Part shown: in pieces, positions 1,566-64,000 of the stretch
How positions within the stretch are numbered: the stretch's first letter is position 1
How the letters are laid out: each line of letters starts with the position of its first letter
NCBI RefSeq assembly: GCF_002113885.1
Contig: NW_018480066.1
Span: 351,090-415,089 of the forward strand
Reading direction: 5' to 3'
Length of the DNA: 64,000 nt
DNA from: Mizuhopecten yessoensis
Taxonomy: Eukaryota
Notes under the pieces: generated by a model
Told to the model about the DNA's origin: nothing
Database searches by the model: none
What the model saw: only the letters and a program-made list of their open reading frames with translations
Translations under genes and position numbers: made by a program

Positions 1566-3245
1566 TTTCTGATAATGAATTGAGTTACAAACACGGTACT
1601 AAGTGTAAACAAGTCGGTTGATGTCACACACGTATTTTTTGTGACAACTTTTCAACGAAGTGTAATTTGTGACGAAACATGATCACAGTATATATGTAAC
1701 ATATGATTGCTGTTGAAATACTTTTGCAAGTATATAAAATATGTTTGTCTTTCTTAACCGAACTTGTTACAGCAGAACTTTGACAAAACAGTTTTGTTGG
1801 AATAATATTTCATTATATACATGTGCATGTATTGTGTTGCTCGTAGAAACCTGTAAACGTGTAATCTCATCACTGTATACAGAATGATCATTGAGCCAAC
1901 ATTATTATTCAAGGTTGACAATTTAACTTACACTTTGTTAACAACGATTCACTTTACAGACGCAATAGAGTGTCGCACATATGACACTAATTACATGTAA
2001 GCACGTCACTCTTTCTGTATCGACATTACCTCTACGGCCTTCCTTGTGTAATTCTCCATGAGTTCAGACGTATCGAGTCCTCAGAGAATGCAGACGGAAA
2101 TGGATGCAGGTTGGTATGCTTAAAGATAGTACTGTATGTACATGTGACAGAGATCTTCATTTAATCGATTGTATCGTGTTATTCTCCCTTTTACACACAT
2201 AATGTATATCATACCCTCCATTTTGTTTTTGTTGTCGCCTTGGCAACTGTTTGTTAAGCCGACCGCAATCCCCCTTTTTCCGATCAAACCGAACTTCACA
2301 CAGCGCTCCCTTCATCAAAAGTGTGTGTTAAGATTTTGTAAAGTCACGCTTCATGACCTGCCGCAATATAGAAGTTTCTTTTTTGGGATTGCTTCGCAAA
2401 TCCGAGGGTCAGAGGTCAAATTCAAATCTGATTAATCTATTTTGCCACTTATCTCGATATCATTTAAATACTAACATATTTTTTTCAGATTTGTTATAAT
2501 CTGCTACATATATTTGTAGTTACTCTTGAAATAACTAAGATGTGTCATACCACGTGTTTTGTTCGTTTGCATGTATTGACATTCTCTTATACGATAAGGC
2601 ATGGCCACCTGTAAGTGCCAGAAAAGATCTATACGTGTATTTCACATAAAGTATTCAGAGAAGAGCAACAAAAATTACGCGTAGTTTACTGATAAACAGT
2701 CATTTTAATTTAAAACGTGTTTTTCTTACTTTCCCAGTCTCTCTGGCATGATTAGCACATATTTATTACAACATAATGCGCGCTAGCTCAATACTTATAT
2801 TTACGTTTTCTCTCCCTCTTATGTTCTTTTTTAACTTATAAATTATATTTAAAATTAAAAATGGCCGCTTTATCGACAGTCCACACAATTTCGTTTAATA
2901 GTTTGAACAGCGTGTTGTAACGTGCGGATTGGCAAACAAAGTAGTACTTTGAAATTTTAACAAACACTTCAATTTTATTTCACAATTCAGTATCAATACA
3001 ATTGCGTATGATATGTCTATAGGGTGATTTCAGTTTATCAATAGAAATCTGAGCTGAAAGGCAGATTTTAAATTGTTTTCGATTTTCCTCGGAACAAATT
3101 TCGCGCATGGATAAATACAGTGAACAACCGTGAATCCGACCTTGACCTCCACGAGGTAGTTATTTTTGGAAGTTAAATTAGCAAACCGTGGCTGCTGGAC
3201 GCGTGATACTGATAGCGTTTGAAGTGAGTGACCTTGCGACGGAGC

Positions 3246-3390
3246 ACAGGGGTTCGTTACAAATGTCTAAAATACACATATGCCTTGTGGATGTTTATGT
3301 GTGCTGGAACTCATATCAGTAGGTCTATAGCATATGTGTCAGTAGGTCTATAGCATATATGTATTTTAGACATTTGTAACGAACCCCTGT
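3246..3390. mobile_element. 145-bp MITE-like element with ~38-bp inverted repeats (ACAGGGGTTCGTTACAAATG...)
   Basis: acaggggttcgttacaaatgtctaaaatacacatatgc pairs with gcatatatgtattttagacatttgtaacgaacccctgt (1 mismatch); CAGGGG end is hAT-like; no clear TSD. Confidence 0.7.
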
Positions 3391-61500: not shown

Positions 61501-64000
61501 ATACAACAAAATTAGTGTATGTTGTAAATACAGTAACGGTAATACAATAAAATTATTGTATGGTGTAAATACAGCCACGATAATACCACAAAATTATTGT
61601 ATGGTGAAAATACAGTAACGGTAATACCACAAAATTATTATATGGTGTATATACAGCCACGGTAATACAACCGAATTATTGTATGGTGTAAATACAGTAA
61701 CGGTAATACCACAGAATTATTGTTTCTAAATACAGTAACGGTAATACCACAGAATTAGTGAATACATTAAATACAGTATTGTATGGTGTAAATATAATAA
61801 CGGTAATACCACAGAATTATTGTATGGTGTAAATACAGCGACGGTAATAGCACAGAATTAGTGTATGGTGTAAATACAGTAACCGTTACACCACAGAATT
61901 ATTGTTTGTGTAGATACAGTAACCGTAACACCACAGAATTATTGTATGATGTAAGTACAGTAACGGTAATACCACAGAATTATTGTATGAAAATACAGTA
62001 ACGGTAATACCACAGAATAAGTGAATAAAATAAATACAGTAACGGTAACACAACAAAATTATAGTATAATGTAAATACAGTAACGGTTATAACACAGGGT
62101 TATTGTATGGTGTAAATATAGTAACCGTTATACCACAGAGTTATTTTATGGTGTAAATACCGTAACCGTTATACCACAGAGTTATTGTATGGTGTAAATA
62201 CAGTAACGGTACTTCCACAAAATTAGTGAATATAGTAAATACAGTAAGAGTAACACCACAGAAATGTTGTAAAATATAAATACAGCGACGGTAATACACA
62301 GAACTGTTCTGTAATGTAAATACAGTAACGGTAATACCACAGAATTATTGTATGATGTAAATACAACGACGGTAATACCACAGAATGATTCTATAATGGA
62401 ACTACAATAGTGTTTAAACCACAGTATAAGTATATTCTTTAAATACAGTAACGGTAACACCACCGAATTATAGCTTAATGTAAATACAGTAACGGTAACT
62501 CCACTGAATTATAGTATAATGTAAATATAGTATGGTAACACAACATAATTATAGTATAATGTAAATACAGTAACGATAATACCACTAAATTATTGTATGT
62601 TGTAAATACAGTAACCGTTATACCACAGGAATATTGTATGGTGTAAATATAGTAACCGTTATACCACAGAGTTATTGTATGGTGAAAATACAGTAACGGT
62701 TATACCACAGAGTTATTGTATGGTGTAAATACAGTAACCGTTATACCACAGAGTTATTGTATGGTGAAAATACAGTAACGGTAACACCACATAATTAGTG
62801 TATAATGTAAATACAGTAACGGTATCACCACAGAATTATAGTTTAATGTAAATACAGTAACGGTATCACCACAGAATTATAGTATAGTGTGAATACAGTA
62901 ACGGTAACACCACAGAATTATAGTTTAATGTAAATATAGTAACGGTATCACCACAGAATGTTGTAAAATGTTAAATACAGCGACGGTAATAACACAGAAT
63001 TAGTGTATGGTGTAAATACAGTGAAGGTAATACCTCATAATTAGTGTATAATGGAAATACAGTAACGGTAACACCACAGAATTAGTGTGTTTTTCAAATA
63101 CAGCCATGGTACTGTACTATGTACAATACTATAAGAATAGGTTCAAATTTAAGCGAAACGTTTGTGCATTGCTGATCGTTCACATTGCATCGTAACGATT
63201 ATTACATCCTGTTAATTAACGATCGTACTGTCGGTGAATATTACGAAGTCAAAGACTAATTGATAAGCAATCATTTATCAAGCAATCAAACATGTAAAAA
63301 TCTTGGACATTGGATATAACATTGAAATTGCATACATTACCTGTTCAGTTCAAATTAGCCACAAACACAACGCAAAAAAAATTAAAAACACTTCTCGCAC
63401 GTGATACAGATTTAAAACAAGTAATGTTATGGTGTGAAAAATAGGAAGCAGTATCATTATTACTGTCAAACTTTTCAAAAGCATACAAATTATCCGTTTT
63501 TCAATATTTTCAGCATGTAATGAAAGGCTTTCGACGATATAATTCCTTACTATTATTTCAAGACATCTAACAGCGATGTTAAGCAAGTTTTGTCTAGATA
63601 ATCATTATTTAATCATATATTACATGTTCATTGTTATGTTTTATTCATTTTTAGCTTTATCTTTTATGAAATTTCCTCAAAGCTAGGTAAAGCTGTAAAT
63701 GAGTTCTTCTTCTTTAATGATAGTAACATGTATGTTTCCAATGGTCATCGTCTTTTCACAGTCATTTAATATATATATATATTTTTTATTAAAGTGCAGC
63801 TTAGTTATCTTAAAAAAATTGTCGTCGGACTCAATGGCCGGTAGGTCATAATTCGCCTTTCCCCATTCTTTAATTTACTCCATTATTGTTTCAAATGAAT
63901 TCAAGACATTAGCGGATTTGTTTTTTTAATCCCTTTGATACAATCTCGTCTTTCAAAATCAGGAGAAGACTCTACTGACACCTGCAGCCGCAATGAAACC
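37555..64000 (+). CDS. TRPM-like channel gene, copy B (ORF potentially intact; runs off the window end in the pore-loop exon)
   Basis: Phase-consistent stop-free exon chain: 37555-37600 (cgccATG), 41272-41418, 42034-42272, 44246-44420, 48256-48400, 48846-48960, 49505-49667, 49909-50120, 50447-50563, 51177-51206, 55156-55185, 55537-55615, 55823-55951, 56947-57046, 57473-57716, 58296-58388, 58773-58940, 59328-59579, 59806-59998, 63963-end. Same TRPM motifs as copy A up to the pore. The first exon and the donor after 42272 are the least certain parts. Confidence 0.85.
38862..39316. repeat. 64-bp minisatellite x7, copy B only
   Basis: gagtaagagagttccatgtacttgtttacacaaggtacacagcgaattatttagtacattaatt. 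Confidence 0.95.
40283..41238 (-). mobile_element. LTR retrotransposon remnant: ~741-bp LTR (40283-41023) preceded by PPT and ~200 bp internal sequence
   Basis: Minus strand reads AGGGGAGta then TGTAACCCAGG ... CCGGTGACA; block absent at the paralogous site ~4650. Confidence 0.7.
41272..41418 (+). CDS. Copy B SLOG/MHR1 exon
   Basis: TNSGVSTYTTQQPTLAAFLVGDSIGFVPKPWPKAKFKEALVDTLKDFG; paralog of 4679-4816. Confidence 0.75.
42034..42272 (+). CDS. Copy B SLOG exon (PWVFCECINPP..NTFCLIGIK)
   Basis: acttag acceptor; W and IGI match TRPM GAWIITGG...TIGIA; donor ambiguous (42273 gtgaag or 42280 gtatgt). Confidence 0.7.
42687..43808. repeat. 60-bp minisatellite, ~19 units, core nearly invariant
   Basis: Explains ORFs 42608-43708 and 42722-43813. 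Confidence 0.97.
44246..44420 (+). CDS. Copy B SLOG-region exon (EKEEGKKIMIPEK..LFLEEKLS..KQF)
   Basis: tttcag/gtaagt; LEExLS resembles TRPM LEKxIS. Confidence 0.75.
46130..47185 (+). mobile_element. HINE/DINE-1-like (Helentron-associated) non-autonomous element
   Basis: 5' subterminal ttgtccccaaacggt versus 3' accggtggggaacta; (CCGT/CTGT)n microsatellite 46180-46232; ~140-160-bp central repeats rich in tgacct; nested 41-bp x3.6 repeat 46925-47073; ends ccttgtt. Confidence 0.75.
48256..48400 (+). CDS. Copy B SLOG exon (MKLPTIVVVVEGD..GSGMAADLIG)
   Basis: gattag/gtaaga; no stop. Confidence 0.88.
48846..50563 (+). CDS. Copy B MHR2/3 exons (48846-48960, 49505-49667, 49909-50120, 50447-50563)
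   Basis: Phase-consistent GT-AG exons; last encodes LLLYALKENLYDITEVLVDKGV..KDLY (TRPM AL..N..FV..L...GV motif). Confidence 0.8.
51340..54952. repeat. ~22-bp satellite, ~3.6 kb
   Basis: Paralog of 14785-16916 with higher-order block duplications. Confidence 0.95.
55537..57716 (+). CDS. Copy B MHR4 exons (55537-55615, 55823-55951, 56947-57046, 57473-57716)
   Basis: Paralogous to copy A 17510-19400; stop-free. Confidence 0.88.
58296..59998 (+). CDS. Copy B pre-S1 to pore exons (58296-58388, 58773-58940, 59328-59579, 59806-59998)
   Basis: Close paralogs of the copy A transmembrane exons; canonical splice sites. Confidence 0.9.
58593..58770. repeat. 28-bp minisatellite, ~6 units
   Basis: Paralog of 19947-20200. 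Confidence 0.9.
60115..63110. repeat. ~41-bp minisatellite, ~3 kb
   Basis: Paralog of 21495-22320; homogeneous sub-block at ~60690-61010. Confidence 0.95.

What the first reader, a model, noticed from the sequence alone, without database searches (positions are those of the whole stretch)
2058..64000. Tandem pair of divergent, enzyme-less TRPM-like channels with a remodelled SLOG sensor
Seen: two collinear copies of a ~23-exon TRPM-type gene. Copy A appears to end ~70 aa after the TRP box, with no NUDT9-H or alpha-kinase. The SLOG glycine loops are altered in both copies: ISVTGG becomes AFLVGD, WIITGG becomes WVFCEC, VxEGG becomes VVEGD, GSGRxAD becomes GSGMAAD. Known: TRPM2 MHR1/2 is a SLOG fold that binds ADP-ribose, and the SLOG domain of bacterial Thoeris ThsA senses a TIR-made cyclic ADPR isomer. 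Inference: a lineage-specific expanded TRPM subfamily whose nucleotide pocket has changed or lost its ligand, possibly an immune or sensory receptor-channel array.
Basis: partly seen in the sequence, partly recalled or inferred. Interest (0 to 1): 0.75.

Follow-up and report, generated by a model that had tools for sequence, protein, structure and literature searches.

The report
Tandem scallop TRPM-like channel genes
The window holds two young tandem copies of a bivalve-specific TRPM-type ion channel gene that has no enzyme tail and has lost the known ADP-ribose contacts, one copy being intact and the other broken in this assembly, which makes it an ordinary though fast-evolving gene family rather than a new kind of system.

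Summary
Two collinear + strand copies of a 23-exon TRPM-type gene are present: A at 2058-25994, and B from 37555, cut by the window end. Both carry AFLVGD, WVFCEC, VVEGD and GSGMAAD. The protein ends about 77 residues after the TRP-box Trp, with no NUDT9-H or kinase.

The copies are not divergent: dS is about 0.07, and the C-terminal halves are 95% identical. They belong to a three-copy array; an older intact copy Z lies upstream on the same contig.

Copy B is an intact reading frame. Copy A in this assembly carries four frame-breaking lesions in the N-terminal half. Public contigs contradict two of them, leave one ambiguous, and show another lesion in one DNA run. All three copies appear in contigs of runs guessed to be RNA.

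The genes belong to a bivalve-wide, much-duplicated, NUDT9H-less TRPM family. Its SLOG domain has lost the equivalents of TRPM2 Y295, R302 and R358 but remains under purifying selection (omega about 0.29). Closest solved structures are TRPM4 and TRPM5.

Nothing supports an immune role. This is a new member of a known kind. Elsewhere in this genome the scan holds only one untested note of a TRPM-like fossil gene.

The parts
2058..25994 (+). Copy A, 23 coding exons: e1 2058-2109, e2 4679-4816, e3 8100-8409, e4 9745-9925, e5 11709-11853, e6 12291-12405, e7 12933-13095, e8 13332-13543, e9 13878-13994, e9a 14632-14661, e9b 17121-17150, e10 17510-17590, e11 17752-17880, e12 18647-18746, e13 19157-19400, e14 19655-19744, e15 20204-20371, e16 20705-20956, e17 21185-21377, e18 23166-23328, e19 24795-24970, e20 25308-25373, e21 25960-25994 (TGA).
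   Evidence: tblastn with relatives P0002 and P0001. AG/GT borders and phases. Exons e11-e21 equal public model P0157. Junctions e3-e4, e4-e5, e5-e6, e6-e7 and e7-e8 are seen as GT..AG joints in contigs.
37555..64000 (+). Copy B, cut by the window end: e1 37555-37600, e2 41272-41418, e3 42034-42272, e4 44246-44420, e5 48256-48400, e6 48846-48960, e7 49505-49667, e8 49909-50120, e9 50447-50563, e9a 51177-51206, e9b 55156-55185, e10 55537-55615, e11 55823-55951, e12 56947-57046, e13 57473-57716, e14 58296-58388, e15 58773-58940, e16 59328-59579, e17 59806-59998, e18 63963-64000+. Exons e18-e21 continue at contig C76739:415052-418629.
   Evidence: All borders are AG/GT, phases are consistent and there are 0 stops. 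Exons e12-e21 are identical to public model P0001. A 533-nt spliced contig carrying the copy-B letters spans e5-e8. Exon lengths sum to 3117 nt, i.e. 1038 codons plus stop.
8100..8409 (+). Copy A exon 3. It has an internal tandem duplication relative to B (310 vs 239 nt). In this assembly it is out of frame, with the first stop TAG at 8231-8233.
   Evidence: Contigs of X18 (RNA guess, depth 3.3) and X1 (DNA) carry one extra base at 8152-8155, which puts the rest of the exon in the open frame. X1 in addition lacks 8344 and 8346.
9751..9753 (+). In-frame TAA in copy A exon 4 (copy B has GAA).
   Evidence: Position 9751 reads G in X16, X18 and X1, each at full depth. The X18 and X1 contigs are copy-A-specific.
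11717..11719 (+). In-frame TAA in copy A exon 5 (copy B has TTA, copy Z has ATA).
   Evidence: (the tool flags '1 TAA'). Reads are ambiguous here: the one X1 contig across it turns copy-B-like from 11669 on and has one unlisted difference.
17510..17513 (+). Two extra bases at the start of copy A exon 10 (81 vs 79 nt), a frameshift.
4720..4737 (+). AFLVGD (SLOG strand 1) in copy A. Copy B has it at 41322-41339.
   Evidence: The family consensus is V/IGDS.
8105..8122 (+). WVFCEC (SLOG second loop) in copy A. Copy B has it at 42039-42056.
   Evidence: This form is specific to scallops; oysters and mussels have WIIYRG-like strings.
11735..11833 (+). VVEGD ... GSGMAAD in copy A exon 5. Copy B has them at 48282-48296 and 48360-48380.
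   Evidence: LSDAT_euk match, E 4.1e-07, profile positions 179-220. Aligns to TRPM4 residues 272-316.
20204..23328 (+). Transmembrane exons e15-e18 of copy A: S1-S6, with the pore loop reading ...YWSIYGEF... in e17. Copy B has them from 58773 on.
   Evidence: Ion_trans matches. Aligned to TRPM5 and nvTRPM2 transmembrane regions.
24835..24852 (+). TRP box WRFHRS in copy A exon 19.
25995..37554 (.). Spacer between the copies, rich in tandem repeats, with no further coding match.

Best explanation
Shown:
- The window holds two young tandem duplicates, A and B, of a scallop gene for a TRPM-type cation channel subunit of about 1038 residues.
- A third, older, intact copy Z lies about 30 kb upstream on the same contig.
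- The protein has a degenerate SLOG/MHR1-2 domain, MHR3-4, six transmembrane helices with a pore loop reading YGE, a TRP helix and a short helical tail. It has no NUDT9-H and no kinase.
- It belongs to a much-duplicated TRPM family found here only in bivalves, on the TRPM-beta side of my tree. By sequence and fold it is closest to TRPM4/TRPM5 and cnidarian TRPM2.
- Copy B is intact and appears in spliced contigs.
- Copy A also appears in spliced contigs, but its allele in this assembly carries four frame-breaking lesions in the N-terminal half. At least two of these are absent from other public runs.

Inferred:
- The channel is a tetramer that is not gated by ADP-ribose in the TRPM2 manner, because the equivalents of Y295, R302 and R358 are gone.
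- The SLOG domain is kept for structure or for another partner (omega 0.29).
- Internal Ca2+ is the most likely co-agonist, because most of the S2-S3/TRP calcium-site residues recalled from TRPM2/4/5/8 are retained.
- Copy A is a duplicate under relaxed constraint with null alleles in the population.
For: Gene structure and state of the copies:
- Exon models, phases and lesions.
- Public models of A and B cover only the C-halves: P0157 starts in e11 and P0001 in e12.
- Splice joints 8409|9745, 9925|11709, 11853|12291, 12405|12933 and 13095|13332 are seen. A copy-A-specific e3+e4 contig (X18) and a copy-B-typed e5-e8 contig (X16) are present. A contig with the copy-Z letter at 11749 lies at depth 265.
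- The genome holds three full copies plus two relic exons. The next paralogs are only 34-43% identical. Z has intact candidates for 20 of 20 exons sought.

Divergence and selection:
- A vs B: dS 0.067, omega 0.66 over 385 N-half codons; dS 0.079, omega 0.35 over 530 C-half codons.
- B vs Z: omega 0.29, 0.27 and 0.24 for SLOG, MHR3-4 and TM parts.

Family identity:
- Pfam finds LSDAT_euk, the TRPM2-like domain and Ion_trans, and nothing else. LSDAT_euk scores 37-39 bits in scallops, 54-75 in oyster and mussel, and 248 in a canonical mollusc TRPM.
- PDB by sequence: TRPM5 4.8e-44, nvTRPM2 2.8e-43.
- PDB by fold: TRPM4, TRPM5 and nvTRPM2 come first, over 1086-1166 columns.
- Trees: A+B 100*, scallop clade 100*, bivalve family 100*.

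ADP-ribose contacts:
- The residues are named in passages of PMC6759353.
- They were mapped onto the motifs through chain 6mix numbering.
- They are deleted or replaced in 10 of 10 bivalve rows.
Against: - No full-length transcript was seen; the joints cover e3-e8 only.
- The three 'RNA' runs are guesses by the tool and are kept as contigs.
- Two of copy A's four lesions are contradicted by other runs, one is ambiguous and one is unchecked, so A may be functional in many animals, or the assembly may be wrong there.
- One contig (X1) shows a different 2-nt loss, but a single contig can be wrong.
- The Gln of the recalled calcium site is Pro in scallops, so calcium gating is unproven.
- Placement among the published clades TRPS, beta, beta-like and gamma is unresolved. 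My trees had no TRPS and no NUDT9H-bearing reference, and the relevant fork has 83% support and is drawn open.
Confidence: 0.8

Rival explanations
1. Both window copies are working genes. Copy A's lesions are assembly slips or rare alleles of the sequenced animal, and A is simply a second, slightly different channel subunit.
For: - The e4 stop reads GAA in three runs, and the e3 frame is restored by one extra base in two runs.
- Copy A e3-e4 is spliced in contigs of X16 and X18.
- A's C-half is intact, with omega 0.35 against B.
Against: - Four separate lesions lie in one haplotype.
- N-half omega is 0.66 against 0.35 for the C-half, though on only 55 differences.
- X1 shows another 2-nt loss in e3.
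- The e5 stop and the e10 shift are not contradicted by any read seen.
Confidence: 0.3
2. This is the first reader's reading: the remodelled SLOG is a sensor for a different nucleotide signal, such as a cyclic ADPR isomer, and the array is an immune or sensory receptor-channel set.
For: - The SLOG region is still under purifying selection between B and Z, omega 0.29.
- It still models as alternating strands and helices with pLDDT 70-88.
- The loop encoded by e3 and the start of e4 is hypervariable between copies.
- The family is much duplicated in bivalves.
Against: - All three known ADPR contacts are lost, and three of the four glycine-rich phosphate-loop motifs are gone or altered.
- The hypervariable stretch models as disordered, pLDDT under 50 at residues 80-108 of the Pecten relative.
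- No TIR, cyclase or other signal-making gene was seen in the window.
- TRPM4/5 show similar motif loss without such a role.
Confidence: 0.12
3. The whole local cluster is decaying and none of the copies makes a working channel.
For: - Copy A is broken in this assembly.
- Two relic exons lie on the opposite strand.
- Public models cover the C-halves only.
Against: - B and Z are open through all exons tested.
- Omega is 0.24-0.29 between B and Z.
- Full-length relatives of 1027-1046 residues exist in two other scallop genera.
- Contigs typed to A, B and Z are present in runs guessed to be RNA.
Confidence: 0.05

Closest known systems
Vertebrate TRPM4 and TRPM5 (enzyme-less, Ca2+-activated TRPM channels)
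   Same: - Best fold matches over the whole chain, and TRPM5 is the best sequence match among solved structures.
- No NUDT9-H.
- The SLOG loops are altered in the same places: LVGEE, IDGD/NGD and GSGG.
   Different: - Only 17-18% identity.
- The window gene also lacks the roughly 18-residue segment that follows the HTHF motif.
- The pore loop reads YGE where the aligned TRPM5 reads FGQ.
- Pro replaces the S2 Gln.
- Whether Ca2+ gates it is untested.
TRPM2 (human, zebrafish, Nematostella; ADPR-gated, with NUDT9-H)
   Same: - Same overall architecture up to the TRP helix. nvTRPM2 scores E 2.8e-43 by sequence and is in the top five by fold.
- Public databases name these genes 'TRPM2-like'.
   Different: - No NUDT9-H.
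- The Y295 and R302 equivalents are deleted and R358 is Met.
[quoted passage not shown] 2026 (PMC13143021; abstract and sections 6 and 26 read)
   Same: - Both clades are NUDT9H-less, and mollusks are said to have both.
- The Pecten beta-like member is said to lack N-terminal cysteines, as here (0-1 Cys before the first strand).
- In my tree the family sits with a Branchiostoma 'TRPM8' and mollusc 'TRPM-like 2' proteins. It does not sit with the kinase/coiled-coil group, nor with the echinoderm-hemichordate group.
   Different: - The paper's accession table is a supplement that I could not open, so identity with either clade is not shown.
- The parts of the paper that I read do not mention loss of the SLOG motifs or a bivalve expansion.
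'TRPM2' expansion reported in oysters (Fu et al. 2021, PMC8004665; passages read)
   Same: - The paper reports 21 'TRPM2' copies in C. gigas, 18 in C. virginica and 5 in Mizuhopecten yessoensis, with tandem duplication.
- My profile search returns dozens of oyster proteins of this family, many on one chromosome-sized contig.
   Different: - That paper counts by database name.
- In the passages I saw, it does not separate NUDT9H-less members or describe the SLOG changes.
TRPS (ced-11 family; Himmel et al. 2020, PMC7306681; passages read)
   Same: A divergent TRPM-like family with SLOG and without an N-terminal Cys-rich part.
   Different: - TRPS is said to keep a Nudix/NUDT9H domain; this gene has none.
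- No TRPS sequence was available for a tree.

Membership tests
TRPM channel family | N-terminal SLOG / MHR1-2 domain | tested here: met
   LSDAT_euk on exon 5 scores E 4.1e-07, 30.1 bits against a cut-off of 25.7. The Pecten relative scores 36.6 bits. The match is weak and partial, covering profile positions 174-225 of 266.
TRPM channel family | MHR3-4 (Pfam TRPM2-like domain) | tested here: met
   PF25508 on exon 11, E 2.6e-08. P0157, the public model of copy A, scores E 7.5e-22.
TRPM channel family | Six-helix ion transport domain followed by a TRP box | tested here: met
   Ion_trans on P0157, E 8.3e-10. WRFHRS lies at 24835-24852.
TRPM channel family | Whole-chain fold like solved TRPM structures | tested here: met
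   Tested on the Pecten relative P0152, not on the window protein. Every match listed, through rank 50, is a TRPM chain (E 4e-30 to 2e-25). Model pLDDT is 66.8 and pTM 0.61.
TRPM2-type ADPR-gated channel | C-terminal NUDT9-H domain | tested here: not met
   The stop lies about 77 residues after the TRP Trp. There is no NUDIX in 7 of 7 proteins scanned or in 10 of 10 downstream pieces.
TRPM2-type ADPR-gated channel | MHR1/2 ADPR contacts Y295, R302 and R358 | tested here: not met
   The segment with Y295 and R302 is deleted in 10 of 10 bivalve rows, and R358 is Met in the window genes.
TRPM6/7-type | C-terminal alpha-kinase | tested here: not met
   No kinase match.
TRPS | Nudix/NUDT9H retained, as stated in PMC7306681 and PMC13143021 | tested here: not met
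TRPS | Groups with ced-11 in a tree | not tested
   No TRPS sequence came from any search.
TRPM-beta-like (Morini 2026) | No NUDT9H and, in Pecten, no N-terminal cysteines | tested here: met
   copy A has 0 and copy B has 1 Cys before the first strand.
TRPM-beta-like (Morini 2026) | Groups with the paper's reference sequences | not testable with these tools
   The accession table is a closed supplement. In my own tree the deciding fork has 83% support and is drawn open.

The most novel reading that the evidence does not exclude
The bivalve-wide family of short TRPM channels may be a fast-diversifying receptor-channel family.
- Its constrained but rebuilt SLOG domain, with a hypervariable loop encoded by exons 3-4, would sense ligands other than ADP-ribose.
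- Tandem birth, gene conversion (exon 5 is 94% identical between B and Z, against 76-80% for its neighbours) and segregating null alleles would resemble the dynamics of chemoreceptor or immune gene families.
Probability: 0.15. Interest if true: 0.6.

Novelty: new member of a known kind. Interest (0 to 1): 0.3.

Why it matters
- It corrects a public annotation. Two 'TRPM2-like/TRPM5-like' half-models are really the C-halves of a 23-exon gene pair. One copy can encode a full 1038-residue channel; the other is broken in the reference.
- The many bivalve genes called 'TRPM2' include a family that cannot work like TRPM2: it has no NUDT9-H and none of the three MHR1/2 ADPR contacts. This bears on studies that read their expression as an oxidative-stress or ADPR response.
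- The family is a natural test of what a SLOG domain does in a TRPM channel once nucleotide binding is gone.

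Tried and rejected
Tried without result:
- tblastn of 13 relatives against the introns, the spacer and the region after exon 21 found no further exons (best E 0.077).
- tblastn of canonical TRPMs against 37.6-48.2 kb found no relic SLOG exons in copy B, only e2, e3 and e4.
- Pfam on single exons mostly gave nothing: 4 of 20 pieces hit a TRPM-related family.
- The Atlas look-up gave only leads: near clusters in rotifers, chordates and xenacoelomorphs.
- The word-based protein searches scored only the 8000 candidates sharing most words. 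Absence of non-bivalve hits is therefore not proof of absence.
- The Zhikong scallop TRP survey (PMC8539334, passages read) lists four TRPMs and not this family.
- I searched print for this family. I found no description of its SLOG loss. The supplements of PMC13143021 and PMC8004665, which may list these very genes, were closed.

- Exons were handled one by one and counts were summed.
- Public models P0001 and P0157 and the Pecten relative P0152 stood in for the window proteins.

Rejected readings:
- The long ORFs at 42608-43813 and 36097-36919 are read-through of 66-nt and 33-nt tandem repeats.

Full report
WHAT IS THERE

The window is AT-rich eukaryotic DNA (GC 0.31-0.37). Its two halves match each other on the + strand over exons, introns and satellites at 73-92% identity. 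A TRPM-like exon chain was found by three steps. An exon-16 piece was searched against 1.84 billion representatives, giving 194 hits at E <= 0.001. The relatives P0001 and P0002 were then mapped back by tblastn. Every border was read.

A 30-nt micro-exon (e9a) was added by a splice-site and frame scan. It matches the same stretch of the Pecten and Argopecten proteins and occurs in all three copies. Copy A runs from the ATG at 2058 to the TGA at 25992-25994. Copy B runs from 37555 and is cut in exon 18 by the window end. Its exons 18-21 lie at contig positions 415052-418629.

STATE OF THE TWO COPIES

Copy B has AG/GT at every border, consistent phases and no stop. Its exon lengths sum to 3117 nt, i.e. 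1038 codons plus stop.

Copy A, read exon by exon in the phases that B and the relatives use, has four lesions:
- Exon 3 is 310 nt against 239 in B and falls out of frame, with its first stop at 8231-8233.
- TAA at 9751-9753 in exon 4.
- TAA at 11717-11719 in exon 5; the genome search tool also flags this stop.
- Two extra bases at the start of exon 10.

Exons 11-21 of A are open. The public gene models agree with this picture. P0157 and P0158 (525 and 461 aa) start at a Met in exon 11 of A. P0001 (484 aa) starts in exon 12 of B and is identical to B.

READS

I laid contigs of three runs that the tool guesses to be RNA (X15, X16, X18) and one DNA run (X1) on 8050-13600 at 97% likeness. Contigs cannot show level or strand.

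GT..AG joints were seen at 8409|9745 (X16, X18), 9925|11709, 11853|12291, 12405|12933 and 13095|13332 (X16). These are exactly my e3 to e8 junctions.

Typing of the contigs:
- One X18 contig matches 203 nt of copy A's very distinctive exon 3 without a difference and continues into exon 4. Copy A is therefore in spliced contigs.
- A 533-nt X16 contig across e5-e8 carries the copy-B letter at all 9 A/B-diagnostic places listed, so it comes from B.
- A further X16 contig at depth 265 has T at 11749, the copy-Z letter.

Evidence on the lesions:
- Position 9751 reads G, not T, in X16, X18 and X1. The exon-4 stop is therefore private to the assembly or its animal.
- One extra base at 8152-8155 in X18 (depth 3.3 only) and X1 restores the exon-3 frame. 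Exon 3 then carries an in-frame internal duplication of about 24 codons relative to B.
- X1 also lacks 8344 and 8346, which would break the frame again.
- At 11718 the evidence is ambiguous. The X1 contig across it is copy-A-like up to at least 11612 and copy-B-like from 11669 on. Its one unlisted difference may be 11718. This fits a conversion tract or a chimeric contig.

ARRAY AND AGES

Five exon queries against the window's own genome (988 Mb, 82,659 contigs) each found the same three places on contig C76739: Z at 305.8-328.2 kb, A and B. They also found a relic TRP-box exon and a relic MHR4 exon on the minus strand, and a small contig that duplicates Z's exon 5. The next paralogs are 34-43% identical.

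Z has intact candidates for 20 of 20 exons sought; e1, e9a and e14 were not in that search, though e9a turned up.

Nei-Gojobori counts, summed over exons:
- A vs B, N-half: dS 0.067, dN 0.044, omega 0.66 over 385 codons (e1 and e3 left out).
- A vs B, C-half: dS 0.079, dN 0.028, omega 0.35 over 530 codons.
- B vs Z: dS 0.95, 0.97 and 0.53, with omega 0.29, 0.27 and 0.24, for e2-e7, e8-e13 and e15-e21.

A and B are therefore young and Z is old. The SLOG region is as constrained as the rest. A's N-half looks relaxed, but on only 55 differences.

WHAT FAMILY

Pfam finds only LSDAT_euk/LSDAT_prok, the TRPM2-like domain and Ion_trans. The LSDAT_euk score falls from 248 bits in a canonical mollusc TRPM, to 54-75 in oyster and mussel relatives, to 37-39 in scallop relatives.

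Against solved structures by sequence the Pecten relative P0152 scores:
- TRPM5, 4.8e-44
- nvTRPM2, 2.8e-43
- TRPM2, about 6e-42
- TRPM1/3, about 1e-38
- TRPM4/8, about 1e-36
- TRPM7, about 1e-24

An AlphaFold model of P0152 (13-row alignment, pLDDT 66.8, pTM 0.61) keeps alternating strands and helices in residues 10-295. Residues 80-108 and 296-366 are poorly predicted. Foldseek ranks TRPM4, TRPM5 and nvTRPM2 first, over 1086-1166 columns at 17-18% identity.

The named close relatives are full-length proteins of 1027-1046 residues from Argopecten and Pecten, two per chromosome-sized contig. A profile of ten family members found 77 proteins at E <= 1e-20. All 56 with a name are from oysters or mussels, many on one Ostrea contig.

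In trees, A and B are sisters (100*), inside a scallop clade (100*, stem 0.8-0.9), inside a bivalve family (100*, stem about 0.9). Rooted on a kinase-bearing lamprey protein and a coiled-coil sea-cucumber TRPM3, the family falls with a Branchiostoma 'TRPM8', a mollusc 'TRPM-like 2' group and a rotifer protein. It falls apart from a hemichordate-echinoderm-annelid-clam clade. The deciding fork has 83% support and is drawn open.

Morini et al. [quoted passage not shown] I could not see their accession table, so I cannot say which of their clades this is.

THE POCKET

Passages of PMC6759353 name Y295, R302 and R358 and the N-terminus of helix alpha-7 as the ADPR contacts of human TRPM2 MHR1/2. 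A canonical mollusc segment aligned to chain 6mix (query 2-89 to residues 280-366, one gap as in the printed zebrafish alignment) puts a Tyr at 295, an Arg at 302 and the Arg of GSGR at 358.

In the 13-row alignment:
- The roughly 18-residue segment holding the first two is missing in 10 of 10 bivalve rows, present in 2 of 3 canonical rows and partly present in the rotifer row.
- The GSGR Arg is Met in 4 rows, Lys in 5 and Gly in 1.
- The first loop is GDS in 8 of 10 rows.
- The third motif is EGD in 6 rows, EGG in 3 and NGD in 1.
- The second loop is WV/I-CEC-like only in scallops.

Solved TRPM4 and TRPM5 read IDGD/NGD, GSGG and LVGEE at the same places. Loss of these loops is therefore not new among TRPMs.

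HOW IT MOST LIKELY WORKS

This section is inferred. The protein is a tetrameric cation channel of the TRPM fold without an enzyme tail, and it is not opened by ADP-ribose in the TRPM2 way.

In the printed alignment to TRPM5, S2 reads LEEYVP against LEEIRQ and S3 reads WNAMD against WNKCD. From memory, supported only by PDB titles that name Q771 and D797 mutants with calcium, these are the transmembrane calcium-site residues. Glu, Asn and Asp are kept and the Gln is Pro. Calcium as co-agonist is my best guess at about even odds.

The pore loop reads YGE where TRPM5 has FGQ. From memory, a Glu there goes with divalent permeability in TRPM3/6/7.

LIMITS

- No joined spliced protein was used anywhere. 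Folds and trees rest on public proxies.
- The 'RNA' label of three runs is the tool's guess.
- Supplements of the two most relevant papers were closed.

Noticed in passing
window 8779-9308 vs 42687-43808; 15019-16910 vs 51572-54945; 21494-22317 vs 60115-63088; 36095-36821: Homologous introns of A and B hold the same tandem repeats in very different numbers: the 66-nt unit 8 vs 17 copies, the 22-nt unit about 86 vs 152, and the 41-nt unit about 20 vs 72. A 33-nt array of 22 copies lies upstream of B's first exon; its counterpart in A runs into the N gap at 1382-1565. The long ORFs at 42608-43813 and 36097-36919 are read-through of these repeats.
   Followed up: partly
window 9745-9925 vs 44246-44420, and 8100-8409 vs 42034-42272: Exon 3 and the first 60 nt or so of exon 4 are far more different between A and B than any other exon, with many substitutions and indels. 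The last 120 nt of exon 4 are identical. In the Pecten model this stretch is a low-confidence loop (residues 80-108). A conversion boundary or a fast-evolving disordered loop would both fit.
   Followed up: partly
contig C76739:308729-308873 (Z exon 5, locus L015) vs window 48256-48400: Exon 5, which holds VVEGD and GSGMAAD, is 94% identical between Z and B (pS 0.11), while neighbouring exons are 76-80% identical (pS 0.5-0.77). This looks like gene conversion limited to this exon. TM exons e16-e20 also show lower pS (0.29-0.38).
   Followed up: partly
contig C76739:338981-339151 (-) and 425209-425286 (-): Single relic exons of the same gene family lie on the opposite strand, between Z and A and downstream of B. 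One is a TRP-box exon at 58% identity and the other an MHR4 exon at 81%.
   Followed up: no
G000:C81342:3231-3368: A small separate contig holds an exon-5 match with the same score as copy Z. It is probably an unplaced allele or duplicate of Z.
   Followed up: no
window 11669-12312, run X1: The DNA run X1 reads copy-B letters on copy A from 11669 to at least 12312, while being copy-A-like upstream. This is either a conversion tract in that animal's copy A or a chimeric contig.
   Followed up: partly
public model P0158 (copy A, 461 aa): An annotated isoform of copy A ends early with '...FHRSQIRKPEQN', that is, a different splice within or after exon 19 that changes the frame.
   Followed up: no
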